Virus record (IMG/VR): IMGVR_UViG_3300037725_000018
Coordinates: 159,358-223,357 of that record
Length of the DNA stretch: 64,000 bases
Reading direction: 5' to 3' (one strand)
Shown here: positions 17,387 to 34,817 of the stretch, piece by piece
How the letters are laid out: each line of letters opens with the position of its first letter
How positions within the stretch are numbered: the first letter of the stretch is position 1
Notes under the pieces: generated by a model
The model's database searches: none
What the model was told of the DNA's origin: nothing
The model's input: the letters and a program-made list of their open reading frames with translations, nothing else
Position numbers and translations under genes: made by a program

Positions 17387-17869
17387 TTAATAGTCGTACA
17401 TCCCCTTTCGAAGCGGAACTTCTCCGAAGTGAAGAAACGCGCAATTTGGGCACACGATTTTTAAGTTTTCCCAACGGTGGTCTCTTTTGTCCCCGTTTTC
17501 GTGCATCAAAACAAGCGGGACTTTCTTATCTGTTACTCTCCGCTCGTCAAATCCACAGATTTCACATTCTTCTTTTTTATACCCGGAGCGAAGAAGCCTC
17601 TTTTTTAGTTTTACAGAATCGTATCCGGGCTTTTTCCCGTCAATAATGTCGTCAAGCGCGTCTTTTCCTTCATGAAGATTATGTGGGTTTGGAATCCCTT
17701 TCCCCGCTTGGTTTTTCTGCTCCTCGAAAAGCCCGTACATCTTGGCGTACTTTTTGTAGGTGTTATACGAACAGCCTAAGTATTCAGCCGCCTGCCTGCA
17801 AGACTTTGTTAGGTCATTTGCATTTTCAATCTCCGCTTTCGAGAAGTTGTATGAACTTGTATCGGGCAT
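17387..17869 (-). CDS. HNH endonuclease-like protein with N-terminal HTH (possibly degenerate)
   Basis: CEICG...LVLMHENGDKRDHRWENLKIVCPNCA; usual final His after CPNC is Ala. Confidence 0.75.
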   Translation of the reverse strand: MPDTSSYNFSKAEIENANDLTKSCRQAAEYLGCSYNTYKKYAKMYGLFEEQKNQAGKGIPNPHNLHEGKDALDDIIDGKKPGYDSVKLKKRLLRSGYKKEECEICGFDERRVTDKKVPLVLMHENGDKRDHRWENLKIVCPNCAFLHFGEVPLRKGMYDY

Positions 17870-18625: not shown

Positions 18626-21600
18626 TTAATAGATTTCCCAATCGTCGTTCGTTGAGTTGTAAACAAGCGTAACGGAGTTGTTGTCTGTCGGAATAGTTGC
18701 GTTTGTGGAATCGTCAATGGTCGAAGATCCGGCAGTTTCAATCGTTACTGTTCCAGAGCCGTTGTTTTTAACGTTGATTTCTTTTCCGTCAATGTTTTCA
18801 GAAGATTGAATTGTTAAGGTAACGTTCCCGCTGGACGTGTCCACAGAGTAGTATCCGCTTCCGTCTGTGTTTTGTGTTGAAGAAACGTCTAAGCGGTCGT
18901 TGATGAGCGTTCCACCTATAAATTGAAGGTCGGTGTTTGTTACGACCCGATCTCCACCAAGACCAACGTAGTTTGAAGTTGAAATGGTGATGTTTCCGAT
19001 TGCAACTGCATTGTCTGCGCCAACTGTGGACCCGGAACCGACCGCAAAACTACCATTTACAGTAATAGCGCCGTTATCTAAACTTCCATTAGCTAAAAGA
19101 ACGGTATTTTCAACATCTTGTGAAAGACCGTTTCCTGACCAATAAGCTGTGATTGCGCCCTGCCCAACTCTAAATATGTTTCCCGGAAGAATAGGACCGG
19201 AAAAGTCAAAATCACTTAAATCAGAAACCCCAAGAAGGAATAGATTTTGAAGAATATTTCCGGAAGGAAATGCGTTTGTGTTGTTTCCGGATTTCCAAAG
19301 AAAGAGATCATTTGCGCTATCGGTGTTTAAGTTAAGATCGCTTCCTAAAAGAACTGACGTTGTGAGAATTTGATCTCCGGAAAATACGCTGTCTCCAATC
19401 AAAATTCCGTTTGCGTTTGAACTGGACGTTCTTCCAGATACGTCGTTTGTAGTTCCGAAGAATATCGATCCGGCTGGAGAAAATGAAAGCGCGTCTTGTG
19501 AAGCGGAAGGATTAACAGTTGCCACATAATTGGAGGTATAAACTGTAGCTTCGGTTTCGTCACTTCCACGCCGAACTACAAATGAATCTCTGCGGGAGAA
19601 TGATGTGCCCGATCCCACAACAAAGTCTTCTTCTTGATTATTCCATTCACCAACAGCCACTCCAGCTTCTTCAGTCATTTGAAGACCACGTCCAATTGTA
19701 ATTGCTGAATTATTTTCTGCGGTATTTGCTGCATTTTCTTCACCACCAAGAACAATAGAAGAAGGAAACTTTGAAGAACCTACTTCTCTAAATCCAATTG
19801 TAAATGCAAAGTTTTCATCATATGATGCTCCAAATCCCTCCGCACCAAAGTCTGTGGATTCAAGGGTTCGAAGTTCTCCCGTGGAAGTGTCTCGTATGAC
19901 AAACTCACCACCAACATCTTCAGCATTTCTAACATGATGGGTAACTACCCCGGTATCGGAAACGCTAAACGCTTTGTCAATTGAGTCTCCAACAGAAGTG
20001 TTGTATAGGTTAATGCTAAACACGTCAGATATGCTTCCACTCGACTGTTTAACAACAACACCCTCTGTATCTCCAAGAACAACACGGTTCTCGGTATCCG
20101 CAACTGCGGTTCCACCAATTGCAATAGAGTTGGTTCGGGCTTCACCTTTAATGGCAATAGCGTCAGAACCGCGAACATCACCTTTAATCGAAACGGAACG
20201 CCGCGCTTCATTCAAGTATGTCCCTGTGTCCGGATCTCTTTCGATACTTCCGTCTGCAAAAACTGCCGAATTTTCTGCCAAGTTGTCAAAATCCGATGAA
20301 GAAAAGAACGCTCTAAACGCTCCACCAACTTTGAAAAGGTTTTCAATTGAAGATGAATAAAGAGAGGTTTCTCCAACCACCGATAAGTCGTCAACTCCAA
20401 ATAAGATTGCTGACTCGATTCTTGTAGAAGGTGTAGATGAATTTCCGTTGCCACTTTCCCAAAGAAGCGATTGCACTATGTTGTCATTCGGTACAATATC
20501 GCTAGAAACAAGAATTGAGTCAAGTATATCAGACCCACTACCTATTGTAGTTTTTAGGATAATGGAATCACCTACCGAATTCGTACCCATTCCGGTAAAG
20601 TCGGAAAAATCTCCTACAACAACAGACCCTTGAACATCTACGTCTTGTTCAACGGGGTCGGAGGCAGAACTTGGAGAAAATCCTGAACTCAAAAAGGCAT
20701 TTGCATAAACTACGCTTCCATCCGAACCTTCTCGCACGTAAAAAAGATCGGATCTGTCACCATCCGATACCCCATTACCTACAGTAAATTCATAATCATT
20801 TGCGTTGTACTGCCCAAGAACAACTCTATTTGCATTTGATATATCAATTCCTCTACCAATTGCATATGAAGAACCAGTAAATGCAGGTGGATTTACGTTA
20901 ATATCTGCGCCAATTCCTATACTTAATGCCTCCGATACGCTAACTCCAAAATTATTTGAAGAATCCCCACCACCTATGGCTATTGTGCTTTGGTCATTTG
21001 CGGACACGTTCCTACCGATTGCAATGCTATCTTGTCCGCTAGCCCCTGTTTTATCTGTAGAAGTTCCACCAAAAACAATGGAATTATTACCCGTTGTTCC
21101 GGTTCTATAGCCAAATGTGAATGAATTATTGTTTCCACCGTACTTTGCTTCAAGATTATCCGAATCAGAAAGTGTAATCAACTCTCCGGTGGAAGAGTCT
21201 TGAAGGATGAAATTTGACTCAGTATCGGCTTCGGTGATACCAAGTCCAACGGAACCACCAACATCACCTTGAACGATTGTTCCGGTTTCATCTATCTCGA
21301 AAACTGTCTCGTACTGGCCCAAGCTGGCGTTATAAGCGTCAACAGAAAGGCCGTGACGAACATGGGTTCCATCCCGATACGTTACGTACAGCCCATCCAC
21401 TTCCCCGCGACCATCATAATATATGTTATCTCCGGGGCTTGCGGCAGGCGCTCCGTCCCCAACCCCAACTGCAAATATCCGGCTAGAATCTGTTAGGTTG
21501 GCGATTTGATTAATTTTGCTTGCCAGATAGTCTTCGTTGTATGTCCCCACCGTAAAGTTTGCCACGTTTTTGGAAACGGTGGCTCGCCCAATTGCCGCTG

Positions 21601-24496
21601 AATCGTTTGCGGTTGCCGTGGCGTTTCGCCCCACGGTAACAGAGAAGTTTCCGGAAGACTCTAGCCCCCGGCCAATGGCAATCGCGGCAAAGCCGCTTGC
21701 CTCCGAATCCCCAATCACGATGCTGTCGGAGCTTTCGTTTCCAGACCTTTTTCCGAACGTGAACGCCCCGTTCCCACCGTACCTAGCCGATAGGTTCGAG
21801 CCGGATAGGGTAATGAGTTCTCCGGTGGAAGCATCTTGAAGGACAAATTCGCTTGCGGCGTTTTGCCCGGTAACGTCAACGCTAACCGTAGTGGCTCCTG
21901 TGGACGGATTGAACGCGGAGGTAAGACCAATTCCAGTTTGAATGTTTGACGTGCCGCCACCGCCTCCAAGCAACGAACCGTCTACGTACTCAAGCTCTTT
22001 TGTGCTTGGGTTTCGAACAAGAACCTGTGAAGTGTTCGACCCGGAAGTGATCTCCCTTCCGATAGACAGAACGGACTCATACGTTCCGAGACTTTCGTTA
22101 TAAGCGTCAACAGAAAGGCCGTGGCGAACATGTGTCCCGTCACGATATGTGACATACAGCGAATCCACGCGGCCTCGACCGTCGAAGTAATCGTTGGCAC
22201 CAGAATTTGCTGAAGGGTTGTCTCCAGCACCAACTTGAAGCACGCGGTCGGAGGCGGCGATTCCTGAAATAGATCCGGGCTCCGTTCCCACGTCCTCGTT
22301 GTAGTTACCTATAGCTGCGCCTCCGTGGAATCCGGCTCGCGTGAACGATCCCGTGGCCAGAGCGCCAAGTCCGCTAGCCACGGTTTCGGAACCTGCGGCT
22401 AGGCTGGCGAATCCAGAGGCAACGGTGAATCCACCGAATGCGGCTGCGACGTTGTTGGTGGCTTCGGTGAACCGACCGAAAGCAACGGCATTGGGCGCTG
22501 TAGCTTTCACATTAGTTCCTTGCGTGAACGCGGACTCGCCCGTGCTGTCGTTGAATATGCCGAAGGCAACCGAACCGACGCCACTGGCCTCGTTGAAACT
22601 GCCCACCGTGAAACTGTTGCTTCCAACACTGCCCGAGCGCCCACCGAACGTGACTGCGCCGTTGCCTTCATACGTTATTTCGGAGTTTTCGACAAGCTCG
22701 CCTGAAGACTTGATGAACCCAAAGCCTGCAGCCACGTCTTCGCTACCGGGGTTCAGGTTCACCGTAAACTCGTCCGTGCTGGCGTTATAAAACGTGCTGA
22801 TGCTTGTGCCACCTGTAACGTTCACAGCTCCCGACATCAAACTGCTCCCGGCAACGTATTCAAGCTCGTTGGTGGAGGGATTGCGAACAAGAACCTGTGA
22901 AGTGTTCGTTCCAACAGAAAGGTCATTGAGCTTTAGAGTGGTTAAGATGTTCACGGAACCCCCCGATATTACTTCTAAGGCGTTCGAACGGTCAGAGTCT
23001 CCGGTTCCGTTTCCGATTATGAAAAGACGATCTTCATCGCTTGAAGTATCGCTTGGAATAGTATTGTACTCTCCAATTACAGTTGTGTGTATTTCATCTT
23101 TATAATTTAAAGAAAGTCCACGACCACTTCCAAATGTCAAGCCAAAATTATTGTTTGTATATCCACTGGTATTAAGTTCATTTTCTTTCCCAAATACAGT
23201 CAAGTTTGAAACAACTGGTCCATCATAAGTTGTAATTTCATTTAGTGATCCTGAGACAAAACCTCTCGTTAATTGTTTTGTGGAAAAACTAAAAGAAGGA
23301 ACAAATTGGAGGTCTTTTCTATCAAAAGAAGAAATATCGGTATCATTTAAAGGATTCGATGATGGAAAGGTGAGAACGTATTCGTCTGTACTCGAATTAT
23401 ACTCAACGGTGTCAGGTGTAGTCCAGTTTCCGGAACCCAACTTTCCAATTGAGTTATACTTCCATCGACCATCCAAAATGGGATTGTTTTCTAGGTTCGC
23501 ACCTATAAGACGAAGTTCATTTGTTGTAGAATTATATGAAAATCCAGCGTCTCCTCGAAATACTATGTTTATCGAATTTTCAGCTCCCTGAACAAAAACC
23601 GTATTAGCAAACGCTATAGAACTTTCTCTACTAAAATTAGCTAAATTAATAACTTCTTCTGCAGAAACGCTGTCTCCCGCAGCAAAAAAACTTTGGATAT
23701 TATTCCAATGCTGACTTTCGACACCGATTGAAGCTGATTGTACAAATTCATTTAGAACACCGGGCATTTCGCCAATGATTAAAGAACCTTCCACCGAAAA
23801 AGATTCTACCTCTTCATCTACCCTGTCAGACACAATAACAGAGTGGTTCGCCCCGTCAAATGATCCGTTCTCTTCGCTATCCCCCTGCAAAAGTATAACA
23901 GAATTGCGACTTTGTGAATTTAGCTTGGTATTATTTAATGAAATAAAAGATCGTTCTAAGTTACCATCAACTTCTCCGGAATTAGACGTAAAGAAACTTC
24001 CTTCTATATTACCACCCGAGCTTGGAATAGTGCCTGTTGCTGATACGAAACTAGTTGTTGTGCCAAGATTACCAAATGAAGCAGTGTCTCCGGACAAATA
24101 TGATGCTTGATGTCCTCCGCTACCAACGTCAAAAGCAAATCCTATAAATGAAGAGTATAAAGACACAAACGTTTGTGAGGAGAAGTCTACATCACTCCCC
24201 ACAACTAAATTTTGTATTCCCGATTCAACATTAGTTATCGTATCTCCAAGGGCTAACCCGGAACCGGAACCTTCAATTTTTAACAGGTCGTTACTTTTAT
24301 CATAAACAAAGGTAGAGTCAGATCCAAAACTTCCAGCGTCATTGAAGATGATCTCCCCGTCAGAGCCGGGTGCGATAACGTCGCTGCTATCTACACCAAC
24401 ACTAATATCCGGAAGTCCTGTGGATTGGTTGATAAAAGCGGTAATATTGGAAGATCGGTCCAAGTCTTCGACCGTTACGTGCGTCTTTTTTGCCAT
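18626..24496 (-). CDS. Giant modular tail fibre/adhesin with YadA-head-like repeats
   Basis: 1956 aa, G/S/D/N-rich and acidic; repeated A.G...A.G beta-roll turns; internal repeated modules. Confidence 0.8.
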   Translation of the reverse strand: MAKKTHVTVEDLDRSSNITAFINQSTGLPDISVGVDSSDVIAPGSDGEIIFNDAGSFGSDSTFVYDKSNDLLKIEGSGSGLALGDTITNVESGIQNLVVGSDVDFSSQTFVSLYSSFIGFAFDVGSGGHQASYLSGDTASFGNLGTTTSFVSATGTIPSSGGNIEGSFFTSNSGEVDGNLERSFISLNNTKLNSQSRNSVILLQGDSEENGSFDGANHSVIVSDRVDEEVESFSVEGSLIIGEMPGVLNEFVQSASIGVESQHWNNIQSFFAAGDSVSAEEVINLANFSRESSIAFANTVFVQGAENSINIVFRGDAGFSYNSTTNELRLIGANLENNPILDGRWKYNSIGKLGSGNWTTPDTVEYNSSTDEYVLTFPSSNPLNDTDISSFDRKDLQFVPSFSFSTKQLTRGFVSGSLNEITTYDGPVVSNLTVFGKENELNTSGYTNNNFGLTFGSGRGLSLNYKDEIHTTVIGEYNTIPSDTSSDEDRLFIIGNGTGDSDRSNALEVISGGSVNILTTLKLNDLSVGTNTSQVLVRNPSTNELEYVAGSSLMSGAVNVTGGTSISTFYNASTDEFTVNLNPGSEDVAAGFGFIKSSGELVENSEITYEGNGAVTFGGRSGSVGSNSFTVGSFNEASGVGSVAFGIFNDSTGESAFTQGTNVKATAPNAVAFGRFTEATNNVAAAFGGFTVASGFASLAAGSETVASGLGALATGSFTRAGFHGGAAIGNYNEDVGTEPGSISGIAASDRVLQVGAGDNPSANSGANDYFDGRGRVDSLYVTYRDGTHVRHGLSVDAYNESLGTYESVLSIGREITSGSNTSQVLVRNPSTKELEYVDGSLLGGGGGTSNIQTGIGLTSAFNPSTGATTVSVDVTGQNAASEFVLQDASTGELITLSGSNLSARYGGNGAFTFGKRSGNESSDSIVIGDSEASGFAAIAIGRGLESSGNFSVTVGRNATATANDSAAIGRATVSKNVANFTVGTYNEDYLASKINQIANLTDSSRIFAVGVGDGAPAASPGDNIYYDGRGEVDGLYVTYRDGTHVRHGLSVDAYNASLGQYETVFEIDETGTIVQGDVGGSVGLGITEADTESNFILQDSSTGELITLSDSDNLEAKYGGNNNSFTFGYRTGTTGNNSIVFGGTSTDKTGASGQDSIAIGRNVSANDQSTIAIGGGDSSNNFGVSVSEALSIGIGADINVNPPAFTGSSYAIGRGIDISNANRVVLGQYNANDYEFTVGNGVSDGDRSDLFYVREGSDGSVVYANAFLSSGFSPSSASDPVEQDVDVQGSVVVGDFSDFTGMGTNSVGDSIILKTTIGSGSDILDSILVSSDIVPNDNIVQSLLWESGNGNSSTPSTRIESAILFGVDDLSVVGETSLYSSSIENLFKVGGAFRAFFSSSDFDNLAENSAVFADGSIERDPDTGTYLNEARRSVSIKGDVRGSDAIAIKGEARTNSIAIGGTAVADTENRVVLGDTEGVVVKQSSGSISDVFSINLYNTSVGDSIDKAFSVSDTGVVTHHVRNAEDVGGEFVIRDTSTGELRTLESTDFGAEGFGASYDENFAFTIGFREVGSSKFPSSIVLGGEENAANTAENNSAITIGRGLQMTEEAGVAVGEWNNQEEDFVVGSGTSFSRRDSFVVRRGSDETEATVYTSNYVATVNPSASQDALSFSPAGSIFFGTTNDVSGRTSSSNANGILIGDSVFSGDQILTTSVLLGSDLNLNTDSANDLFLWKSGNNTNAFPSGNILQNLFLLGVSDLSDFDFSGPILPGNIFRVGQGAITAYWSGNGLSQDVENTVLLANGSLDNGAITVNGSFAVGSGSTVGADNAVAIGNITISTSNYVGLGGDRVVTNTDLQFIGGTLINDRLDVSSTQNTDGSGYYSVDTSSGNVTLTIQSSENIDGKEINVKNNGSGTVTIETAGSSTIDDSTNATIPTDNNSVTLVYNSTNDDWEIY

Positions 24497-24580
24497 TTAA
24501 CTATTTAGCTAGTTTAAAATTCGCCTGTGTTTCAAAAAGATGTGAAAACCTTTTAAAGTCTTTGTTAATATATAGGTAGT

Positions 24581-27500: not shown

Positions 27501-27781
27501 TCATCGAGCGTGATCAACTCCCCTGTTAGAGAGTCTCGAACAAGCAAATCGCCAGCCGAATCCCCGCCGTTAGGGTTGGCAAGCGTGACTTCGCCAAACT
27601 CGTTGACTTCAAACACAGATTCTTCTGTTCCCGTGCTTGGGTTAAACGATTTCACGGAAAGGGAAGACTGTTCGGTTCGAGTCAAAATTTCATCTTCTTC
27701 AAACCGAATCGCAGCGCCGGAATAATCGTAGTCTACAGAAACCGTAGGTTGATTTTTAAGTTGTGTTTCTATAAGTGCCAT
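24581..27781 (-). CDS. Modular tail fibre/adhesin with YadA-like repeats
   Basis: 1066 aa; shares modules with neighbours; C-terminal TTPDGTTQYRIAVDNNGNV motif. Confidence 0.8.
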   Translation of the reverse strand: MALIETQLKNQPTVSVDYDYSGAAIRFEEDEILTRTEQSSLSVKSFNPSTGTEESVFEVNEFGEVTLANPNGGDSAGDLLVRDSLTGELITLDDGGSPALGARYEGNGALTLGYRSVSNGIGESSVVIGATESNPSSAPGTNNVAIGPGNSVGFNSTFNTETNLSFAFGSNNTLENTGTVGIGIGNTIYPENGYAFGRNNTLESSFGSESFYAIGENNTIFQDASDNTFAIGNDISWGSGDTSFLPTVIIGSGNLDIASSTDLAFLVGSGTDSARRNALAVKRLGNADEETVTHLDNLYLNIDPTASWRGLRGGRNIVISSSVESGVNEGSAFVSNSIIVDSIIGEGELGGSFVLNSSIVSEGVTQGGDGSMFINAELTPQNSVSEIYENAFIHSTRIGQDGQGNNDNSRKFAVTETGAGPISVFAFNDDTILAYQAVGPNNEREGSLVLVGTGSVDSPIKDVQNSLSIRGATMRAPRSVGIGPNVEVNTSDRIVLGNDNGTVVKQVQGSTADLFSVNLYNTSVGDAVNQVFTVEDDGTIKIGKPDSGSNISEALVRNPNTGEIETFDLNALNGGGGNGGAILAGLGLTSTFNASTGNTTLDVDPVEADTESDMILQDSSTGELISLSSGADLTAKHEGNGSFTVGYRRGTDTGQYSSVFGGADPSLASDTENFANGEGNVIVGHYNEINSGSFDQARFSAALGYGNYIRGERSVAIGGAGSFSGTRQNIEANNSFAFGIGNTNSSDETLIIGFQNNVTNSPTETVVLGNNLNLNSGGFGSGKTLIGTYNEGVSDASFEVGVGENDSTRITGAFIEVKTGTPIFTTTSVHLPSSTDSTLNDTGFGSPTNSIIINSTGDGSPSQSFLLNSDVGDAGVADSFFYNSSLTNVSNLTFFDNAMFTSSVDGVDATIDFGTFLIKTDIDSSNIDEFRQQNNSTSNVTVFAYNEKQILAYAGGLQRDGSVIIAGKNGGFIGNASNATSISGGNVSDGANNSVAIGGIASVSTSNTVAIGDTGGTDFYGGNVTIVDDEIDIQTPGNGVVVTTPDGTTQYRIAVDNNGNVTSEEI

Positions 27782-27796
27782 AAAATTTTTATGAAT

Positions 27797-30700
27797 TTAA
27801 AGTTCTTCTGATACAATCGTACCGTCGTTCTTGACTTTCACGCGAAATCTAGTTCCATCGGGGCTTTTCAAAATTTGCCCAAGCCCCGGCGTCGTAACCT
27901 CCATTTCTCCAGACGTGACCCGAACAGAACCGCCGAAGTCAACTGCTTTCGCCACAACGTCCGAAAGCTCTACGGTGAAAGCGTCCGTGCTAGCGTTGTA
28001 GCTGGAGTCAATTCCTATGCCGCCAACAACGTTTGTCGAGCCGCCACCACCGGAAAAGTTGCTTGCATCTATGTATTCTAGCTCTTTCGTACTTGGGTTT
28101 CGAACAAGCACTTGTGAGGCGTTGGTGCCCTCTGCGATTTCACGTCCAATTGACAGAACGGTTTCAACTTGTGTTACGCCATCTACGTTCTTAATGTATT
28201 CGCCTGTGGAGTCGTTTACCTGAAATCGTTCAACCGTTAAGCCTTCACGAACATATGTTCCGTCCCTGTAGGTGACGTACAATCCGTCTGCTCTTCCAAG
28301 TCCGTCATTAAATTCACTACCAAATCCTTGTTGACTTGGATTATCACCAACTCCAACAGCAAGTAAGCGGTCCTGCGGCGTGATATCTTCAATACCGTCG
28401 GGCTCGTTGCCTGTGCCAAGGTAATCTTCATTATAAACACCTTGAGCGATTCCAGCATACGTGCGAGAGATTGTATAGTTTCCCATTGCTGTGGAACTAT
28501 AGCCTTTTGCTTCTGTGTAAATTCCCATCGCGGTAGATCCAATGCCGCTTGTTTCTGTGTTGGACCCCATTGCAACGGATTGGTTGGCGTTTGCTATTGT
28601 GCTAATTCCCATTGCAATGGAGTAAAAACCGTTTGCTTCTGTGCCAGCCCCTATTGCCGTGGAAAAACCACCGCTTGCTTCTGTGTTCTCTCCCATCGCA
28701 ACAGAATTAGCACCAACCGCACCCGCACGTGAACCCAACGTGAACGCCCCATTTCCTTCGTATTTTGCGAAAGCACTTGACCCGTCAAGCGTAATCAACT
28801 CTCCGGTGGACGAGTCCCGAAGAATCATATCCGATTCCGTATCTGAAATAATTGGATCAACGTTGAACGTCGTATCGCCTGTTGACGGGTTGAACACGGA
28901 TTCAAGCCCAGTTCCTGCAACAATGGTTTCGCCTCCACTACCCAACGTGGACCCATCTACGTATTCAAGCTCGTTTGTGTTGGGGTTTCTGACGAGAACT
29001 TGGCTTGCGTCTGTGCCCTCAGAAATCTCCGGGCCAATTCGAAGCTCGGTTTCATAGTCCCCCAAACTAGCGTTGTAACTGTCCAGAGAAAGCCCGTGCC
29101 GGATGTGCGTGCCTTCACGAACTGTAACGTACAGCCCGTCCACTCTTCCGCGACCGTCAATGTAATTCCCGTCGCCGGGGCTTGTGCTTGGGTTTTCACC
29201 CACGCCCACCGCGAATATGCGCTCAGAAAGGGATTGGAAGTCCTCGATCCCCTGCTGTGCGGGTGGTGGATTCTGGGTGAGACCGCCAAGATAGTCTTCG
29301 TTGAAGAACCCAACAACCCGGCTTGCATACGGCCACGCCACGGTGTTGTCTCCCCCGGCGTGAGAAGATCGCCCTCTAGCAAGCGTGTCGGAACCTTCGC
29401 TGTGAGAACTTGTTCCAAGAGCTTCAGTCCGAAACCCCTCGGCGTGAGCAGCCGCGCCCCCCCCGGCGACGGTCGAGTTACCTTCAGCAACGCAGTTTGT
29501 CCCCACCGCTTGGGTTCCAAGGCCCAGAGCGACGGCACCAGAATCAGTCGCCTGCGCTCCCTGTCCAGCGGCGAACGCGCCTATGTCCGTGGCCCTAGAA
29601 CCGCTTCCTAAAGCAACTGCGGCTGTGGAAGTGGCCTCTGTGTTCTCGCCAAGGGCGATAGATGCTTCTCCGGTCGCAATAAGCCCGGTGCCTCCTGCGG
29701 CGAACGAGCCGTTTCCTATCGATTGGGCTGAATCTCTCTGCCCGAAGGTGAACGCTCCACTGCCTTCGTAACGCGCCCGGTCGCCCGGAGTACGCGCAAC
29801 TTCCCCGGAAACGTCTGCGTTCATCAAAAGCCCGCCCGTTTCGGCGCTTGATGAAATTTGTCGAGTCGTAAAAAATATTTTCCCGAACGTTTCATTTTGC
29901 TGCGGGATATCCGACTGGTCCAATCCGGGAAAGTTGCTAAGAAGCGTTCCCTGCCCGGTATCCACAACGCTTGTTGTTGTGGTGTCGGTGATCTCCGCAA
30001 TAAGCCTGTAATCAAGGCTAAAGGTGCCACTGTCGAACTGCTCGACAATAACGTAATACTTCTCTGCCGACGAATTTTCTTGCCAATTCACTTCAACGGG
30101 GTTGCTGGAGTCAGGCGTTGGAAGGCTTTGGCGAAAGTCACCGTCCCTTGCGGTGAGAAGCCCACCCGGCGTCTCAGCTAAGACGAACCACGTCAGAAAA
30201 AAGTTTCCCGAATTAGAGTGCTGGACGTTCACAGTTGTCGGGATATCGGGAACAAAACCCATGTCAAACGTGCCACCCGGTTGGACGGTGAAGCCTGAAG
30301 AAATAAGTGAAGACCCGTTGAACGCAAGGTCTGGGCTTGCCCCTAGACTTCCGTTATCGTTAAATTGAACTTCATTATCATTTCCAGAAGCAACAACGTC
30401 GAAGATGGTTTCGCCCGTTGAAGCGTTAAATGTGGAGGAAAGCCCAAGTCCCGCCTGTATGGTTGAACTCCCATTCCCGCCACCGGAAAATTGACTACCG
30501 GAAACTTTTTCTATTTTTCCGGTCGTTGGGTTGCGAACAAGAACTTGATCTGTATTAGAAGCATTTGAAGGTTCTGTTATTTCGATATCACCATTTTTTC
30601 GAAAAACAAACCCGTCACTTCTGTTCCCATCATTGTTTCCATTTCCAATGACAAATAGTTTGTCATTGTCTGTAGCTGTGTCGGTTCCGGCTTCATTAAA

Positions 30701-32179
30701 TTCGCCAAATATAGCCATTGGAACTTCGTTTGAATAATCAAGATTGAGACCATTACCGAACGCAAACTTTGAACCGTATGCGTCAGATTCTGTAAACGTT
30801 TCGGTATTCATCTCATTTCCGGTACCGAACACATAAATATCGCTAGTGGAACCAGCTTGATTTTCCCCTATAGCGTTTATTTCATTAAATCTACCAAAAA
30901 CGAAAACTCGGTCATTGCCCGTACGGAACCCGCCCGGTCGATAACGAAGAACGCCTTGATTAAAATCAAATTGACTAAGATCAGAGTTGCTTAATGGCTC
31001 ACTATTAAAACTTACAGTCCAAACATTTGTTGATGAATTGAAACTAGAATTTCCAGCTTCAACATAAGAAGACCCATTTACGCTTTGGTTATCAAACTCA
31101 AAAAGACTAAAACTTGGGTTTCCAAAAAGTTCGGGACCGTCTTCTATTTTTAATTCATTTGTGGTGCTGTTGTATTCAATTGCAAGGTCTGAAACATCTC
31201 TGTAATTGACGAAATTATCAATTCCAAAGTTTCCGGAATAATCGGAATCTACAAGTGATCCGGAACTACTAAACATCAAAGAGGTTAAAGTAGAATCAAT
31301 CAAGCCTTGTTGCCCAGCCTTAATTGAATTTCTAATCCCCCTAGCCGCCGCAGATTGGGCACCTATAAAGAGATTTGATGATGAATCATTCAAATTTCCA
31401 AACTCTACCTTGTCCGGGAGAAGTCCAAGATATGCATTATACTTTCCCCCATTAGCGTTAAAGTTTCCGCTTGCTAATCCTACTATTAAACTTTTGTCAA
31501 TGTTTTCTATTGTATTTGAGCTTGTAGAGGCAACATTGACAAAAGAGTCAGTTATGTTATTTAAGGACACGCCACCGTCTGCGGCATTAACAAAACTTCT
31601 TTCTGTATTACTTATTGAACCACTACGAACATTTGCAAAAGTATATTCTACGTCTTCACCAAATGTACCACCATCCCCTGTAAGAAAGGAAGCAATTTTA
31701 TCTGTGCCAAATCCAGCCCCGGAATACGTCATATCGTTTCCGGTTGCAAAAGTAAAACCAATGTTGGAAACTTCGGAACCTTGACCCGTGACAATCGAGT
31801 TTTCTACAACGCCGGGAATTGTAATGTTAACCCCGGTAATAAAACTTTCTTTTGCGGGAATTGCAAAATCAGCAATATCTACCCCAAATCCAGTAACAAA
31901 GTTAGATTCTCCAAATTCTGTTGACGTTGGGTTTCCAAGAACAACTTGTCCGGGTTCTCCAACCGAAAGGTCCCCAATGTTAGCGTCAAACGTTAGGTCC
32001 GGGCTTGAACCAAACGTACCTTGATCGTTGAATTGAATTTCGGTGTCGTTTCCTGCTACGCTAGCAAGGATATCGGCGTCAACGTCGAAAACGTAGTTTC
32101 CCGTTGAACTGTTGAAGGTAACGGAAACGTCACCGTCAGCAAAAAGTAGATCGTCTTCTGTTATGTGAAGTCCTGCCAT
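27797..32179 (-). CDS. Modular tail fibre/adhesin with Hep/Hag YadA head repeats
   Basis: 1460 aa; tandem S.AMG..TEA.G repeats; C-terminal KSPDGTRFRVKVKNDG. Confidence 0.85.
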   Translation of the reverse strand: MAGLHITEDDLLFADGDVSVTFNSSTGNYVFDVDADILASVAGNDTEIQFNDQGTFGSSPDLTFDANIGDLSVGEPGQVVLGNPTSTEFGESNFVTGFGVDIADFAIPAKESFITGVNITIPGVVENSIVTGQGSEVSNIGFTFATGNDMTYSGAGFGTDKIASFLTGDGGTFGEDVEYTFANVRSGSISNTERSFVNAADGGVSLNNITDSFVNVASTSSNTIENIDKSLIVGLASGNFNANGGKYNAYLGLLPDKVEFGNLNDSSSNLFIGAQSAAARGIRNSIKAGQQGLIDSTLTSLMFSSSGSLVDSDYSGNFGIDNFVNYRDVSDLAIEYNSTTNELKIEDGPELFGNPSFSLFEFDNQSVNGSSYVEAGNSSFNSSTNVWTVSFNSEPLSNSDLSQFDFNQGVLRYRPGGFRTGNDRVFVFGRFNEINAIGENQAGSTSDIYVFGTGNEMNTETFTESDAYGSKFAFGNGLNLDYSNEVPMAIFGEFNEAGTDTATDNDKLFVIGNGNNDGNRSDGFVFRKNGDIEITEPSNASNTDQVLVRNPTTGKIEKVSGSQFSGGGNGSSTIQAGLGLSSTFNASTGETIFDVVASGNDNEVQFNDNGSLGASPDLAFNGSSLISSGFTVQPGGTFDMGFVPDIPTTVNVQHSNSGNFFLTWFVLAETPGGLLTARDGDFRQSLPTPDSSNPVEVNWQENSSAEKYYVIVEQFDSGTFSLDYRLIAEITDTTTTSVVDTGQGTLLSNFPGLDQSDIPQQNETFGKIFFTTRQISSSAETGGLLMNADVSGEVARTPGDRARYEGSGAFTFGQRDSAQSIGNGSFAAGGTGLIATGEASIALGENTEATSTAAVALGSGSRATDIGAFAAGQGAQATDSGAVALGLGTQAVGTNCVAEGNSTVAGGGAAAHAEGFRTEALGTSSHSEGSDTLARGRSSHAGGDNTVAWPYASRVVGFFNEDYLGGLTQNPPPAQQGIEDFQSLSERIFAVGVGENPSTSPGDGNYIDGRGRVDGLYVTVREGTHIRHGLSLDSYNASLGDYETELRIGPEISEGTDASQVLVRNPNTNELEYVDGSTLGSGGETIVAGTGLESVFNPSTGDTTFNVDPIISDTESDMILRDSSTGELITLDGSSAFAKYEGNGAFTLGSRAGAVGANSVAMGENTEASGGFSTAIGAGTEANGFYSIAMGISTIANANQSVAMGSNTETSGIGSTAMGIYTEAKGYSSTAMGNYTISRTYAGIAQGVYNEDYLGTGNEPDGIEDITPQDRLLAVGVGDNPSQQGFGSEFNDGLGRADGLYVTYRDGTYVREGLTVERFQVNDSTGEYIKNVDGVTQVETVLSIGREIAEGTNASQVLVRNPSTKELEYIDASNFSGGGGSTNVVGGIGIDSSYNASTDAFTVELSDVVAKAVDFGGSVRVTSGEMEVTTPGLGQILKSPDGTRFRVKVKNDGTIVSEEL

Positions 32180-32193
32180 AAAAATACTTTAGT

Positions 32194-34050
32194 TTAGTAT
32201 GTTAAAGGTTTTTTACTAATTTTGTAGATTGCCTCTTCATCTTCGGTACTCGTTTCATCCGTGAAATAGATATTTCCTTTATACTCTCCAATAAAAGAGC
32301 CGAACCGTCCCGTAGGACGTTCACCACGATTTCTAGGTGCCCACCAAAACGAGCGTTGCCTGTCAAGATCGTAAACGTATCTCCCCGGATCTCCAGAAAA
32401 CGTGTTGAAGTGAATTTGATTGTTAGCCACTCCTTCTCGTGCTACCGTAACGTCTTCGGGATTTTCATCTGCGTCTCCTACAACGGATGGATCAATAGGA
32501 ACTGGCGTTATTTCTAAAGTTTGAAGATTTAGTTTCCTATACCCCTCCAGTATAATATTACTTCCATTTATCGAAGTAATACCGCCGATATAAGAGTGGT
32601 TATTATCGTCTGGAACTTCCCATTTCCGGTAGTAGTCTATGCTTTCGGTAACGATATCGATAACCACAATCTGTTTATAATACTTGTTATTAGCTGTGTC
32701 CAAACTAGCTGGAACATCCACATAAAGTTTACGGTTTTCCGAAGATATAAAAATGCTGTGGTCCGAAGTGGGAGTTATGTATTTTTGATCAATGTTTGAA
32801 GACCCTATTTGTATTTCACTATCAATTTCAAGAACACTAGATACCGTTTGATTCTCAATGTCGAAACGAAGAATTTCGGTATCCGCTCTAATGAAATACA
32901 AATACTCATTTCCCTGTATGTCCACATAGTAGCTTAACCCCTGAATACTGTCCGGTATGCCGGGATCGAAAATTTTTGTAACATAAGGTTCTCCGGTGCT
33001 AGGATTTATATCATTCAAGTCAATTTTCCATATGTTTCCACCACCCGGTTCATCGGCAAAGTAAAATGTGTCCCTTACAAGATTTAAGTCTGTTGGAAAG
33101 TCAACTTCTGTGGGCTGGTCAACCAAAACAAATTCTTCGGTGTCTAAGTCCAGAATGGAAATTGCATCTATGCCATCAAACCCACCGTTATTGAATTTAA
33201 ACACATACTTTCCTATTACTTGGTTTCTTGTGCCTTGAGACAAAGCTGTTGTTCCGTCGTCTATGATTTCATAAGACGTATCATATACATCGCCTTGAAC
33301 AAACTCTATACTATCATTGTTTACTTTGAATTCAGCGGTTTTGTTTGGCTTCACAACTTCTGTGGGGGACTTCCCTTCCGATTCTGGAAACCGAACCGGA
33401 TAATCTGTGCGGTTTTCTATGGTGAACTTTTGTCCATCTCCAAGATCGTCAAATTCGCTAGGCTTAAATTCATTGTAACCACGATTAAATGGGTCTTGAA
33501 CGTCTCCGGTGTCCCAAGGCGTTTCAGCGGTAAACACAAACGTATCACCATCAGAAATTTCTTCAACTTCATAAAATCCTGAGTCAATGGTCGTAGTCTC
33601 TGGTTCCACCGGAAATGAGGTTTTACCGAAGACTAATTCTCCCCCGGAATTATAGTTTGATAAAGACTCTCCCGGTGGAACAGATACAAAGTCTTTTCCT
33701 TCTACTCCACCTGTAAAGCCAAAAGAAGACGAGTCAGGTGCAACTAAAACCTTAACAGAAGCGCGGTTTTTAATTGTCACTTCTCTGTTTTCAGAAAAAG
33801 AAGAAGGTGGAAGAACTACATTTATTTGTATCAGTTCAGATCCTGTGTTCTTTATCACGTATACATCACTTTCTACGTTATCCTCCCCAACTAGATTTAT
33901 TCCGGCTGTACCATCTACATCTATAATGCGAGATTTTAGTTTTCTTTCATCTGTTACTTCAAATTCTCCTGTGGAGGCGTTAAAAGAAAAGTCAACGTCC
34001 CCGGATGAATTTTCAAATGAATCTTTCGTTGAGTAGCTATCTACTGCCAT
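32194..34050 (-). CDS. Tail-associated protein, probable C-terminal beta-propeller
   Basis: 618 aa acidic; FNASTG motif; repeated four-strand patterns in C-terminal half. Confidence 0.6.
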   Translation of the reverse strand: MAVDSYSTKDSFENSSGDVDFSFNASTGEFEVTDERKLKSRIIDVDGTAGINLVGEDNVESDVYVIKNTGSELIQINVVLPPSSFSENREVTIKNRASVKVLVAPDSSSFGFTGGVEGKDFVSVPPGESLSNYNSGGELVFGKTSFPVEPETTTIDSGFYEVEEISDGDTFVFTAETPWDTGDVQDPFNRGYNEFKPSEFDDLGDGQKFTIENRTDYPVRFPESEGKSPTEVVKPNKTAEFKVNNDSIEFVQGDVYDTSYEIIDDGTTALSQGTRNQVIGKYVFKFNNGGFDGIDAISILDLDTEEFVLVDQPTEVDFPTDLNLVRDTFYFADEPGGGNIWKIDLNDINPSTGEPYVTKIFDPGIPDSIQGLSYYVDIQGNEYLYFIRADTEILRFDIENQTVSSVLEIDSEIQIGSSNIDQKYITPTSDHSIFISSENRKLYVDVPASLDTANNKYYKQIVVIDIVTESIDYYRKWEVPDDNNHSYIGGITSINGSNIILEGYRKLNLQTLEITPVPIDPSVVGDADENPEDVTVAREGVANNQIHFNTFSGDPGRYVYDLDRQRSFWWAPRNRGERPTGRFGSFIGEYKGNIYFTDETSTEDEEAIYKISKKPLTY

Positions 34051-34086
34051 TTTGCTGTTTTTTACTTGGTTTTTGTTTGAAAATCG

Positions 34087-34758
34087 TTAAACTGTTTCTG
34101 TTTTCAAAAGCCCGTCGTTTCCAAGCCGAACACGTTTTCTTTCGTTTCCGTCCGGACTTACAAGAATAATCCCTTTTCCCGGCTCATAAAACTCTGCATC
34201 CCCACCAACGTTTAAAGTGAATATTTCGCTAAGGCTTGAGTCTTCTGCCAAAATAAGCGGGTCCGTTTGCCCGGAGTTGGCCGTAATTGTGATTTGGTTG
34301 AGTCTTGTGTCGTCTGTTTGCCCGGAACCTACAAGACTTGTTCTCAAGTTTCCGGAATTTGTAACGTCAACAAGCCACTCGTTTCCGTTATCGGATTGAA
34401 GAACAATTCCGTCCGGGTCAATTGAAACTTCTGTTGCTCCGGTGGATGCATTAAAAGAAGTGACAATTCCGTTCTTACCGTCTAAATTCGCAGTAACGGC
34501 TTGGCTAAGTTCATCTTCTGTAACAACGCTTTGGACTGCCCCACCATCGTCGGGGTCGGTTCCGATTTTCCACTCCTCGCTTATGTTGTCATAATAAAGA
34601 ACCGCAGAAGGTTTGTTTCCGCGCCCAATCCGAAGACCTCCAAACTCCGGAAGAGCCGTTAACGTAGGGTCGGGCGTATTGACAAAATCGCTATTAAAAT
34701 CAACGATCTTGTCTTTTGCCTTAAAGTCTTCTACAAGTGTATCTACTAGTGTTGCCAT
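34087..34758 (-). CDS. Short tail fibre/structural protein
   Basis: 223 aa; FNASTG linker; LQSDNGNEW and LVSPDGNERKRVRL motifs. Confidence 0.7.
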   Translation of the reverse strand: MATLVDTLVEDFKAKDKIVDFNSDFVNTPDPTLTALPEFGGLRIGRGNKPSAVLYYDNISEEWKIGTDPDDGGAVQSVVTEDELSQAVTANLDGKNGIVTSFNASTGATEVSIDPDGIVLQSDNGNEWLVDVTNSGNLRTSLVGSGQTDDTRLNQITITANSGQTDPLILAEDSSLSEIFTLNVGGDAEFYEPGKGIILVSPDGNERKRVRLGNDGLLKTETV

Positions 34759-34817
34759 TCAGTTGCCGGGATTTCAAACGTGCATAGAAATTGTAAACCA
34801 TACTTTAAAAAAGATTT

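What the first reader, a model, noticed from the sequence alone, without database searches (positions are those of the whole stretch)
18626..34758. Mix-and-match adhesin cluster built from shared recombinable modules
Seen: five consecutive genes reuse the same blocks: F/YN[APS]STG linkers; ILQDSSTGELITL (19873, 21180, 21815, 25910, 27516, 28797); QVLVRNPxTxELEY (22014, 22884, 26109, 28100, 28983, 30534); DGRGxVDxLYVTxRxGTxxRxGL (21328, 22096, 28260, 29070); and C-terminal SPDG motifs. DNA identity persists: a 28-mer at 21328-21355 equals 22096-22123, and a 25-mer at 22014-22038 equals 22884-22908. GC content swings between segments (40/60 in line 22321-22380 versus 22/60 in line 23581-23640). 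Inference: YadA-like head segments are swapped by recombination at conserved linkers, giving a multi-fibre receptor-binding repertoire without a DGR or invertase.
Basis: partly seen in the sequence, partly recalled or inferred. Interest (0 to 1): 0.62.

Follow-up and report, generated by a model that had tools for sequence, protein, structure and literature searches.

The report
Modular YadA-head phage tail fibres
An uncultured 223-kb tidal-flat phage carries a row of giant tail-fibre genes built from repeated adhesin-like "head" cassettes joined by conserved trimer connectors, and a relative shows whole cassettes exchanged at exactly those connectors, the known way phage fibres evolve, here with new parts.

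Summary

The genes are minus-strand tail-fibre genes of a distant T4-like phage from tidal-flat metagenomes. gA, gB and gC contain eight head modules. Those of gC and the middle of gA are YadA-like beta-rolls by Pfam, PDB sequence search and fold search.

A homotrimer model puts the conserved DGxG-LYVT and QVLVRNP motifs on the three-fold axis, so I read them as trimer connectors.

Two results support exchange at the motifs:
- A related contig, L014, carries the gA cassette (87% DNA identity, up to 100% protein identity) in a different gene with gC-like flanks. Both crossovers fall inside the QVLVRNP and ILQD motifs.
- gA and gC each hold a block of about 500 codons with doubled GC3. No other long ORF in the genome shows this.

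The genome has no reverse transcriptase, invertase or integrase. Independent assemblies of the locus are 100% identical. This is therefore evolutionary shuffling, not programmed switching.

It is a new variant of a known kind. The connector family is rare: 24 clusters among 1.84 billion representatives.

The parts
18626..24496 (-). gA, a 1956-aa fibre protein. It has an N-terminal shaft (aa 1-533), four head modules (entry motifs near aa 590, 885, 1097 and 1533) and a C-terminal beta-sandwich-like tip.
   Evidence: ORF and translation. Motif grammar. YadA_head is sub-threshold at 24.2 bits. Phage_depo_C is weak, E 0.0011, on aa 1874-1949.
21292..23011 (-). High-GC3 block inside gA (codons about 495-1068). 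GC3 is 0.56 here against 0.28 and 0.31 in the flanks. It holds head modules 2 and 3 with DGRG-type exits.
   Evidence: Two-change-point LLR of 55, against a permutation maximum of about 10. Only gA and gC stand out among the 27 ORFs of 400 aa or more.
21170..22036 (-). The exchanged cassette (gA aa 821-1109, from the QVLVRNP motif to the ILQD motif).
   Evidence: 87.2% DNA identity over 867 nt to L014 4763-5623, where it lies in a different gene between gC-like flanks. Protein identity is 82-100%. Synonymous codon identity is 0.80-0.85.
21989..22027 (-). QVLVRNPSTKELE connector motif (gA aa 824-836). It is the upstream crossover site in the comparison with L014.
   Evidence: The identity switch falls at L014 4770-4800, which equals window 22029-21999 in gA and 28116-28086 in gC.
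21170..21208 (-). ILQDSSTGELITL entry motif (gA aa 1097-1109). It is the downstream crossover site in the comparison with L014.
   Evidence: Identity to gA drops after L014 5610-5640, which equals window 21183-21150. From there L014 matches gC at 28843-28675.
24581..27781 (-). gB, a 1066-aa fibre protein with two head modules (entry motifs at aa 80 and 615) and a TPDG C-terminal tail.
   Evidence: It shares only the entry motif with the gC/gA module profile. The head fold was not resolved.
27797..32179 (-). gC, a 1460-aa fibre protein. It has an N-terminal shaft paralogous to gA's, two YadA-like head modules (aa about 800-1007 and 1119-1291) with DGRG/DGLG exits, and an SPDG C-terminal tail.
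   Evidence: A homotrimer model of aa 1140-1460 scored 0.88 against a best control of 0.00.
28939..30343 (-). High-GC3 block inside gC (codons about 612-1080). GC3 is 0.57 here against 0.30 and 0.43 in the flanks.
   Evidence: LLR 38-39.
28238..28306 (-). DGLG..LYVTYRDGT..R.GL exit motif of the last gC head (aa 1292-1314). It is one of four copies; the others are at 21347-21415, 22115-22183 and 29090-29158.
   Evidence: It gives tight inter-chain contacts in the trimer model at aa 1302-1317. The family is rare, with 24 clusters in 1.84 billion representatives.
28076..28114 (-). QVLVRNPSTKELE connector of gC (aa 1356-1368). It is one of six copies.
   Evidence: Contacts between the same residue of different chains at aa 1356-1360 place it on the three-fold axis of the model.
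28480..28705 (-). Four DNA repeats with a 42-nt period. They encode the 14-residue YadA-head repeat of the last gC head.
   Evidence: the repeat finder family D3, 65-70% identity. Pfam YadA_head stretches lie here.
32194..34050 (-). gD, a 618-aa protein with an N-terminal FNASTG linker and a probable beta-propeller distal domain (a lead only).
   Evidence: The Atlas feature score is 0.84, to viral SGL/lactonase-like propeller clusters; that is below the 0.9 reliability mark.
34087..34758 (-). gE, a 223-aa protein with an N-terminal adaptor-like domain, an FNASTG linker and an SPDG tail.
   Evidence: Its N-terminal 85-120 aa recur at the start of a 618-aa protein in L011 (35%) and an 870-aa protein in L015 (41%).
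34818..36149 (-). gF, a 443-aa tail fibre with a C-terminal Peptidase_S74 intramolecular chaperone.
   Evidence: PHROG tail-fibre families. Pfam PF13884.
36230..38266 (-). gG, a 678-aa protein lying between the two S74 fibres. It matches no family.
   Evidence: It is syntenic with a 724-aa protein in L011 at 28% identity.
38333..39043 (-). gH, a 236-aa tail fibre with a Peptidase_S74 domain.
   Evidence: It is 50% identical to the 240-aa protein of L011.

Best explanation
The region is the tail-fibre gene cluster of an uncultured 223-kb phage. The phage is distantly T4-like, comes from tidal-flat sediment, and probably infects Bacteroidota.

Three giant proteins, gA, gB and gC, are most likely homotrimeric fibres built as beads on a string. 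Each bead has the same plan:
- an entry motif (ILQDSSTGELITL ... YEGNGAFTFG.R);
- a variable beta-solenoid head, which is a YadA-like left-handed beta-roll in gC and in the middle of gA;
- an exit motif, either DGRG..LYVT.R.GT..R.GL or F.VG.G...R..;
- a connector (QVLVRNP.T.ELEY, then a Gly-rich stretch, then FN.STG).

The conserved motifs are the parts where the three chains interlock on the fibre axis. That is why they are kept while the heads drift.

Any crossover inside a motif keeps frame and trimer register. The short islands of DNA homology that the motifs create have therefore served as junctions for general recombination, between paralogous modules and between co-circulating related phages. 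Whole head cassettes have been moved, replaced, duplicated or acquired from a different compositional background.

Shown here: the motifs, the YadA-like fold, the mosaic with crossovers at the motifs, the GC3 blocks, and the absence of dedicated diversity enzymes.
Inferred: the trimer, which rests on a model only; receptor binding by the heads; the recombination route; and the host.
For: Phage context:
- Major head protein, portal and large terminase were found by PHROGs.
- The terminase is 41% identical to Flavobacterium phage vB_FspM_immuto.
- Neighbouring genes are S74 fibres, an endolysin, DHFR and ThyA.
- The source is tidal-flat metagenomes.

Heads:
- Pfam YadA_head in gC, E 1.9e-11, four stretches.
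- phmmer against PDB: BpaC at 3.4e-9, plus CbpF, BoaA, AtaA, YadA and EibD.
- AF2 model with pLDDT above 90 over the beta-roll. Foldseek best hits are BoaA 3s6l and CbpF 9gh4.

Trimer:
- Three copies of gC 1140-1460 scored 0.88 (runs 0.88, 0.88, 0.92) against a best control of 0.00. Partner pLDDT was at least 79 and at least 78% of contacts were shared between runs.
- In the tool's calibration this mark was reached by 20 of 30 solved pairs and 1 of 23 single chains. The tool adds that these counts hold only roughly here, because my own alignment and three copies were used.
- The tightest contacts are at QVLVR (aa 1356-1360) and LYVTYRDGT (aa 1302-1317), with 14-residue periodic contacts along the head.

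Mosaic in the relative L014:
- L014 gene 2 reads gB 1-97 (98 falling to 78%), then gC 1121-1156 (75%), then an unrelated head, then gC 1292-1360 (93 falling to 72%), then gA 809-1109 (82-100%), then gC 1113-1170 (88 falling to 70%).
- L014 gene 1 keeps the gC linkers and C-terminus (82-97%), but its last head is replaced and its N-terminus is different.
- The DNA crossovers lie in 30-nt windows over the QVLVRNP and ILQD motifs.
- Synonymous codon identity ranges from 0.33 to 0.85 between segments, which points to different ages.

Composition:
- GC3 blocks have LLR 55 in gA and 38 in gC. All 25 other long ORFs score 8.7 or less.

Intragenomic copies:
- Synonymous sites are saturated in the heads (p = 0.56).
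- They are conserved in motif DNA: ILQD 59/96 against 0.37 expected, p = 1e-6; DGRG plus QVLV, p = 0.007.

More distant relatives:
- L011, and the pair L035 and L036, keep the flanking genes but differ in fibre gene number, length and module order.

Recombination genes and precedent:
- The genome has a RecA/UvsX-like ORF (26.1 bits, just under the 27-bit cut-off) and an SbcC-like gene.
Against: - The decisive relative, L014, is one 5.85-kb metagenomic contig. Assemblers can join co-occurring strains at shared k-mers, so part of its mosaic could be artificial.
- No recombinant of the reference phage itself was seen. Only Logan contigs were available, not raw reads, and contigs drop rare variants.
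- DNA identity between paralogous motifs within the genome is short. The longest exact run is 28 nt, with at most 86% over 73 nt. Frequent homologous exchange within the genome is therefore unlikely.
- The excess of shared synonymous codons in motifs could reflect selection at the nucleotide level or chance codon bias rather than gene conversion.
- The trimer is a model score. TAA heads are solved trimers, so the head part may be recalled from memory.
- gB's heads are not demonstrably YadA-like.
- No virion, host or binding data exist.
Confidence: 0.72

Rival explanations
1. In-place duplication and divergence only. The modules arose by old tandem duplications inside each gene. The motifs are alike purely through structural constraint, and no cassette has moved between genes or phages.
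For: - Synonymous sites between intragenomic head copies are saturated (0.25-0.37 observed against 0.31-0.34 expected).
- DNA similarity between copies is short and low.
- The locus is invariant in three assemblies.
Against: - L014 carries the gA cassette at 87% DNA identity and up to 100% protein identity, in a different gene and between gC-like flanks.
- Synonymous divergence differs widely between adjacent segments.
- Sharp GC3 blocks occur only in gA and gC.
- Motif DNA shows excess synonymous identity.
Confidence: 0.1
2. Assembly artefact. The mosaic patterns come from metagenome assemblers joining related strains at shared motif k-mers, either in L014 or in the window's own contig.
For: - All sequences are metagenomic.
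- Run X4 shows co-occurring variants at 85-95% identity and a fragmented assembly across the fibre genes.
- L014 has a single supporting contig.
Against: - The window's arrangement is reproduced at 100% identity by a JGI contig of 171.8 kb and by a Logan contig of 12,971 bp. The Logan contig spans all four GC3 change points.
- Exact repeats in the window are at most 28 nt, shorter than the 31-mers of the Logan assemblies.
- L014 would need at least eight separate chimeric joins in 5.8 kb.
- The GC3 mosaic does not depend on L014.
Confidence: 0.08
3. Programmed, high-frequency diversification. The cluster would be a switching system, such as an invertible segment, a shufflon or a DGR, that produces fibre isoforms within one phage population.
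For: - Many repeated motifs lie in adjacent genes.
- Several fibre genes sit in a row.
Against: - The 223-kb genome, which CheckV rates 100% complete, has no RVT_1, Resolvase or Phage_integrase match, while the controls ring.
- All genes and repeats are in direct orientation.
- Inverted repeats are at most 29 nt and 76-89% matched.
- Assemblies are identical.
- No clean joints of the reference appear in four runs.
Confidence: 0.03
4. One compound or branched fibre rather than a repertoire of independent fibres. gA to gE, perhaps with gF to gH, would be successive or branching segments of a single appendage, as in the T4 gp34-37 fibre or the Ackermannviridae tail-spike tree. The shared N-terminal FN.STG and EIQFND motifs would be docking elements. 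This rival concerns architecture only and is compatible with the shuffling account.
For: - All five proteins carry the linker motif within their first 21-107 residues.
- gA and gC share an N-terminal shaft and the EIQFND motif.
- The gE N-terminal domain recurs fused to longer proteins in relatives.
- Branched receptor-binding complexes are known (PMC11414711, listed).
Against: - No docking-domain family was detected.
- gB, gC and gE end in the same SPDG tail, which looks like a terminal tip rather than a joint.
- No interaction test was run between different proteins.
Confidence: 0.3

Closest known systems
[quoted passage not shown] 1996 and 1998, as cited in Trojet et al. 2011, PMC3157838)
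   Same: Conserved structural motifs separate variable specificity segments. Exchanges between related phages map within or near the conserved motifs. No dedicated recombinase is involved. The phage is of a distant T4-like lineage.
   Different: - The units here are whole head cassettes of 200-300 residues in proteins of 1000-2000 residues, not short hypervariable loops between glycine-rich motifs or His-box fibrous repeats.
- The motifs are unrelated in sequence.
- No host-range data exist here.
Trimeric autotransporter adhesins (YadA, BoaA, BpaC, AtaA, EibD, CbpF): modular head-neck-stalk fibres
   Same: The heads of gC and gA are homologous to YadA-like left-handed beta-roll heads by sequence and by fold. 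Several heads in series are joined by conserved connectors. A homotrimer is predicted.
   Different: - There is no YadA_anchor beta-barrel, no coiled-coil stalk and no TAA neck match.
- The connectors (DGRG-LYVT, QVLVRNP, FN.STG) have no solved relative by sequence.
- The proteins are phage-encoded virion-type proteins, not outer-membrane autotransporters.
Bacteroidota 'tail fiber domain-containing proteins' (YadA_head repeats plus Peptidase_S74 chaperone, sometimes with PF26696)
   Same: They share the YadA-like head repeats at up to about 56% identity over about 20% of the query. They come from the probable host phylum.
   Different: - gA to gE lack the S74 domain; only gF and gH have it.
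- Those proteins lack the DGRG connector, which is confined to 24 clusters.
Phages with several receptor-binding proteins (the Ackermannviridae branched tail-spike complex, PMC11414711; also phi92 and the K1-5 type, from my own knowledge)
   Same: Eight adjacent fibre-like genes have different distal domains: a beta-sandwich, the SPDG tail, a probable propeller and the S74 type. Modules are acquired horizontally.
   Different: No docking-domain homology was detected, and the virion architecture is unknown. Here the variable units are serial heads along the fibre shaft rather than one catalytic spike per gene.
Dedicated fibre diversifiers: the DGR of Bordetella phage BPP-1, and the Gin/Cin invertible fibre segments of Mu and P1 (from my own knowledge)
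   Same: The outcome is the same in kind: alternative receptor-binding specificities.
   Different: Reverse transcriptase, invertase, and template/variable-repeat or inverted-repeat structures are all absent.

Membership tests
YadA-like head domain (Pfam PF05658, left-handed beta-roll) | A sequence match to the YadA_head repeat above the curated cut-off | tested here: met
   gC scored 44.4 bits against a cut-off of 25, with four stretches. Five stretches lie over the cut-off in the genome scan, all in gC. gA is just under at 24.2 bits. gB has only one weak stretch of 16 bits.
YadA-like head domain (Pfam PF05658, left-handed beta-roll) | A beta-roll fold that superposes on solved TAA heads | tested here: met
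   The model of gC 1090-1460 has pLDDT above 90 over residues 60-190. Foldseek gives BoaA 3s6l at E 5.5e-4 and CbpF 9gh4 at 1.4e-3 with rmsd 2.9 over 130 columns, plus BpaC and AtaA. For gB the test was inconclusive: pLDDT 58.7 and no match.
Trimeric autotransporter adhesin (type Vc secretion) | A C-terminal YadA_anchor beta-barrel (PF03895), with stalk and neck (PF05662) | tested here: not met
   Pfam scans of gA to gE found only YadA_head. True TAAs among the database hits do carry PF03895 and PF05662.
Motif-guided modular shuffling of phage fibres (T-even type) | Variable segments flanked by conserved motifs, repeated within and between fibre genes | tested here: met
   There are eight head modules with a shared entry, exit and connector grammar. 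Profile matches between module types are limited to the motifs.
Motif-guided modular shuffling of phage fibres (T-even type) | Crossover points between related phages coincide with the conserved motifs | tested here: met
   Comparing L014 with the window, junction J1 lies at QVLVRNP and J2 at ILQD, each resolved to 30-nt windows. Further switches lie at the DGLG and FN.STG/EVQFND motifs. Only one close relative was available, and it is a single metagenomic contig.
Motif-guided modular shuffling of phage fibres (T-even type) | Exchange changes host range | not testable with these tools
   There is no host and no isolate.
Diversity-generating retroelement | A reverse transcriptase and a template/variable repeat pair | tested here: not met
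   RVT_1 is absent from the 223-kb genome. The longest direct repeats are at most 147 nt at 68-74% identity.
Invertible fibre segment or shufflon | A serine or tyrosine recombinase and inverted crossover sites | tested here: not met
   Resolvase and Phage_integrase are absent. Inverted repeats are at most 29 nt and 76-89% matched, and none brackets a module.
Peptidase_S74 (endosialidase-chaperone) tail fibres | A C-terminal PF13884 domain | tested here: met
   Met for gF (35.7 bits) and gH (46.4 bits) only. Not met for gA to gE.
Homotrimeric fibre | Three chains interlocked about a common axis | tested here: inconclusive
   The model passes the mark with a score of 0.88 against a best control of 0.00, and places the motifs on the axis. 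It is a prediction, and the head part resembles solved trimers.

The most novel reading that the evidence does not exclude
The connector motifs may be more than structural joints. They could be maintained at the DNA level as recombination linkers: a recombinase-free cassette system in which selection keeps synonymous sites alike, so that head cassettes can be exchanged among paralogous fibre genes and co-infecting phages. The excess synonymous identity in motif DNA (p = 1e-6) fits this. On this reading the rare DGRG-LYVT / QVLVRNP / FN.STG set would be a previously undescribed family of trimer necks evolved for evolvability.
Probability: 0.15. Interest if true: 0.7.

Novelty: new variant of a known kind. 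Interest (0 to 1): 0.48.

Why it matters
Host range of uncultured marine and sediment phages is largely unreadable from sequence. This locus gives a clear grammar: entry motif, head, exit motif, connector. It also gives an observed cassette exchange with crossovers resolved to 30 nt. The principle worked out for T-even coliphages therefore extends to giant fibres made of adhesin-type heads in a phage that probably infects Bacteroidota.

The conserved connectors are natural splice points, predicted to keep trimer register. That makes them testable as junctions for building chimeric fibres in laboratory phage-host pairs. The connector domain itself has no solved relative and is very rare. The locus also ties phage fibres to the widespread Bacteroidota surface proteins that share the same heads.

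The general phenomenon of fibre mosaicism is well known, so the advance is in the parts and the clarity of the example, not in the principle.

Tried and rejected
Searches that found nothing useful:
- Cultured-phage searches found nothing: megablast of 34000-46000, tblastn of gE, and tblastn of gC 1000-1460. BLAST's low-complexity filter may hide repeat-rich matches.
- IMG/VR scans gave little. gE found nothing. gC found only the widespread N-terminal EIQFND motif in unrelated contigs L002-L010. The gA cassette found nothing. Alignment A1 was too diverse to search with.
- Pfam and PHROGs gave nothing for gB, gD, gE or gG.
- Literature: no paper in the library combines 'YadA-like head', 'tail fiber' and 'phage'. 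Two broader searches were swamped by unrelated papers. The eCIS fibre catalogue does not mention YadA.

Results I set aside:
- The PHROG 'HNH endonuclease' hit on gC 1341-1400 covers the connector, not a nuclease. I take it as an annotation quirk.
- The gB head model (pLDDT 58.7) had no PDB match by fold or by sequence.
- Most 'joints' in the laid contigs are cross-mapping of paralogous motifs from the same contig. An example is 22030->25907, carried by the 12,971-bp reference contig. The rest are short contigs of diverged relatives. None is a clean recombinant of the reference.
- The single linker-motif hit outside the cluster (G000 ORF 58835-60355) has no similar sequence context, so I treat it as chance.
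- GC swings as a pure amino-acid-composition effect: rejected, because the shift is in GC3.

Full report
**What is there**

The window is bases 159358-223357 of a 223,357-bp IMG/VR virus record that CheckV rates 100% complete. The interval 18626-34758 is filled by five consecutive minus-strand ORFs:
- gA, 1956 aa
- gB, 1066 aa
- gC, 1460 aa
- gD, 618 aa
- gE, 223 aa

Three more fibre-type genes follow. gF (443 aa) and gH (236 aa) carry a Peptidase_S74 chaperone domain and match many PHROG tail-fibre families. gG (678 aa) lies between them. Further along are DHFR, an endolysin, tRNA-Arg and ThyA.

Elsewhere the genome encodes a major head protein, a portal and a large terminase. The terminase is 49% identical to that of an uncultured 484-kb phage and 41% identical to Flavobacterium phage vB_FspM_immuto. 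Sequencing runs that hold the locus are all tidal-flat metagenomes. This is therefore the tail-fibre cluster of an uncultured, distantly T4-like phage. A Bacteroidota host is an inference from the terminase relatives and from the homologues of the fibre heads.

**Check of the observation**

- 12 F/YN[APS]ST[GDN] linkers
- 6 motifs of the ILQDSSTGELITL type
- 6 motifs of the QVLVRNPxTxELE type
- 4 motifs of the DG[RL]G..D.LYVT.R.GT..R.GL type
- [ST]PDG tails in gB, gC and gE

The 28-mer and 25-mer identities and both GC counts are exact.

In a six-frame scan of the whole genome, 28 of the 29 matches to these four motif classes lie in this cluster's reading frames. The one outside has no similar sequence context.

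DNA similarity between copies is limited to stretches of at most 147 nt at 66-86% identity. gD and gE share only the short linker; gE also has the tail.

**Anatomy**

The motifs follow a grammar. gA and gC start with paralogous N-terminal shafts of about 550 residues. Each shaft ends in an F.IGNG...RS. exit motif, then QVLVRNP, then FN.STG.

After the shafts come head modules: four in gA, two in gB and two in gC. Each module opens with the ILQD entry motif followed by YEGNGAFTFG.R. It then has a variable repeat-rich head. It closes with either the DGRG-LYVT exit (gA modules 2 and 3, both gC modules) or the shorter F.VG.G...R exit. Profile comparison shows that the module types share only the motifs.

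The gC heads are YadA-like by three tests:
- Pfam YadA_head at 44.4 bits.
- phmmer hits to the solved heads of BpaC (3.4e-9), CbpF, BoaA, AtaA, YadA and EibD.
- An AF2 model with pLDDT above 90 over the beta-roll, which Foldseek matches to BoaA and CbpF heads.

The 14-residue repeat is even visible as a 42-nt DNA period at 28480-28705.

gA modules 2 and 3 are homologous to the gC modules at 46% identity. gB's heads could not be assigned.

None of the proteins has a TAA anchor, stalk or neck, so they are not autotransporters.

**What the conserved motifs do**

A three-copy model of gC 1140-1460 passed the tool's mark. It scored 0.88 (runs 0.88, 0.88, 0.92) against a best control of 0.00. Partner pLDDT was at least 79, and the runs shared at least 78% of contacts. 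In the tool's calibration the mark was reached by 20 of 30 solved pairs and 1 of 23 single chains, though the tool notes that these counts hold only roughly here.

Contacts recur every 14 residues along the head. The tightest contacts, including contacts between the same residue on different chains, are at QVLVR (aa 1356-1360) and at LYVTYRDGT (aa 1302-1317).

I infer that the motifs are the places where the three chains interlock on the axis. That explains their conservation. This rests on a model, not a structure, and the head part may be recalled from solved TAA trimers.

The DGRG connector is rare. A profile of it found only 24 clusters at E of 1e-3 or better, and 18 at 1e-10 or better, among 1.84 billion representatives. 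It has no solved relative by sequence.

**Evidence for cassette exchange**

(a) Relative L014. This is JGI sample 3300037314, a 5,850-bp contig with two genes.
- Gene 1, residues 331-1202, is the orthologue of gC 598-1460 at 65.5% identity. Its N-terminus is a head module rather than the gC shaft. Its last head has no close match, while the flanking linker and C-terminus are 82-97% identical.
- Gene 2 begins like gB (residues 1-40 at 98%). It then switches to gC-like sequence just after the ILQD motif, continues through an unrelated head, and returns to gC 1292-1360 (93 falling to 72%).
- Gene 2 then carries gA 809-1109 at 82-100% protein identity, with 100% over gA 910-989. After that it switches back to gC 1113-1170.
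- At the DNA level, L014 4763-5623 matches window 22036-21170 at 87.2%, while its neighbours match gC at 77%.
- In 30-nt windows the switches fall at L014 4770-4800 (QVLVRNP motif) and 5610-5640 (ILQD motif).
- Synonymous codon identity is 0.80-0.85 in the cassette, 0.60 in the gC core, 0.50-0.68 in the neighbouring segments and 0.33 in one further segment. The segments therefore have different ages.

(b) Composition.
- gA codons about 495-1068 have GC3 of 0.56, against 0.28 and 0.31 in the flanks.
- gC codons about 612-1080 have GC3 of 0.57, against 0.30 and 0.43 in the flanks.
- The change-point LLRs are 55 and 38. The other 25 ORFs of 400 aa or more score 8.7 or less, within the permutation nulls.
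- The shift is at third codon positions, so it is not an effect of Gly/Ala-rich heads.
- The change points sit next to connector motifs.

(c) Within the genome.
- Synonymous sites between head copies are saturated (p = 0.56).
- Motif-coding DNA shares more synonymous codons than expected: ILQD 59/96 against 0.37, p = 1e-6; DGRG plus QVLV, p = 0.007.

(d) More distant relatives.
- L011 keeps the order S74 fibre, 724-aa protein, S74 fibre. It then has 618-, 237-, 1572-, 1503- and 912-aa genes with a different module order.
- A second jumbo-phage lineage carrying the connector has fibre pairs of 1198 + 1400 aa in one member and 1577 + 1127 aa in another, between conserved flanks.

(e) A weak population hint.
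- A 363-bp contig was laid from run X7. The same variant letters at 22877-22910 also appear in X4.
- It is about 94% identical to gA 22847-23018. It then continues into an ILQD motif at or below 21220, skipping the high-GC3 block.
- It comes from a diverged relative, and the ILQD match could belong to any module.

**What it is not**

The genome has no reverse transcriptase, serine recombinase or tyrosine recombinase, while the control genomes ring. All repeats are direct, and inverted repeats are trivial.

A 171.8-kb JGI contig and a 12,971-bp Logan contig are 100.000% identical to the window over 24,204 and 12,971 bp. The Logan contig spans all four GC3 change points. These may derive from the same or sister samples, so they are independent assemblies but not necessarily independent populations.

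Laid contigs of four runs show no clean recombinant of the reference. The listed joints are paralogue cross-mapping or diverged relatives. Raw reads were not available, and contigs drop rare variants, so low-frequency recombinants are not excluded.

The phage does encode general recombination functions: a RecA/UvsX-like ORF just under the Pfam cut-off, and an SbcC-like protein.

**Interpretation and comparison**

The best account is ordinary but well illustrated. These are trimeric fibres made of serial heads. Their interlocking connector motifs double as safe crossover points, and general recombination among related phages and paralogous modules has moved, replaced and imported head cassettes.

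[quoted passage not shown] Four things are new here:
- The units are whole YadA-like head cassettes.
- The proteins are 1000-2000 residues long.
- The connector set is rare and structurally unsolved.
- The phage lineage is uncultured and probably infects Bacteroidota.

Whether gA to gE are separate fibres, serial segments or branches is open.

The main weakness is reliance on one short metagenomic relative. The GC3 mosaic and the more distant relatives support the same conclusion independently.

**Scores**

- Confidence in the main explanation: 0.72.
- Novelty: new variant of a known kind.
- Interest: 0.48.

Noticed in passing
window 1-11430: About 50 tightly packed small ORFs of 50-110 aa lie here, mostly on the plus strand. 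There is no ORF above about 130 aa and no Rfam match. It looks like an early-gene array of a large lytic phage.
   Followed up: partly
window 17387-17869 (-), and gC aa 1341-1400: A free-standing HNH endonuclease gene lies just downstream of gA. Separately, PHROG 13470, annotated 'HNH endonuclease', matches the QVLVRNP/FN.STG connector of gC at E 1.7e-6. That suggests some PHROG members carry this connector, or that the family name is misleading.
   Followed up: no
window 20700-26699 in run X4: At 50-70x depth the fibre genes are broken into contigs of 0.2-1.6 kb, with co-occurring variants at 85-95% identity. Variant letters cluster at 22877-22910, 24637-24757 and 26498-26638. This points to fibre microdiversity in the same sediment.
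   Followed up: partly
window 22847-23018 joined to <=21220 (run X7; same variant letters in X4): A 363-bp contig of a diverged relative, about 94% identical, links the end of the gA shaft to an ILQD entry motif. It skips the 1.6-kb high-GC3 block.
   Followed up: partly
L035, L036, L037 (Logan SRR34348032, Logan ERR11788589, JGI 3300005193; one contig is 263 kb): A second lineage of jumbo phages carries the DGRG connector. Their paired giant fibre genes differ in length (1198 + 1400 aa against 1577 + 1127 aa) between conserved flanks. A separate 186-aa protein in L035 matches the gA C-terminal tip (aa 1863-1956) at 41%.
   Followed up: partly
window 34906-34988 and 38427-38509: gF and gH are paralogous S74 fibres: 35% protein identity, with an 83-nt stretch at 71% DNA identity. 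Both have counterparts in relative L011.
   Followed up: partly
window 32194-34050 (gD): The distal two thirds of gD resemble viral SGL/lactonase-like beta-propeller clusters in the ESM Atlas (feature score 0.84, structure TM up to 0.48 by query). This is a lead only, for a non-fibrous receptor-binding or enzymatic tip.
   Followed up: partly
gC aa 39-118 (window about 31826-32065); loci L002-L010: The N-terminal E[IV]QFND.G.FG motif of gA and gC, repeated at gC aa 603, recurs at 34-74% identity in otherwise unrelated IMG/VR contigs. It is probably a widespread fibre N-terminal or attachment element.
   Followed up: no
G000:C1:123170-124252 and 52934-56107 (outside the window): A RecA/UvsX-like ORF (26.1 bits, just under the Pfam cut-off) and an SbcC-like gene lie here. 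They are candidate general recombination machinery of the phage.
   Followed up: partly
window 40770-40843 (-): A single tRNA-Arg(CCT) lies between the endolysin gene and the next ORF.
   Followed up: no
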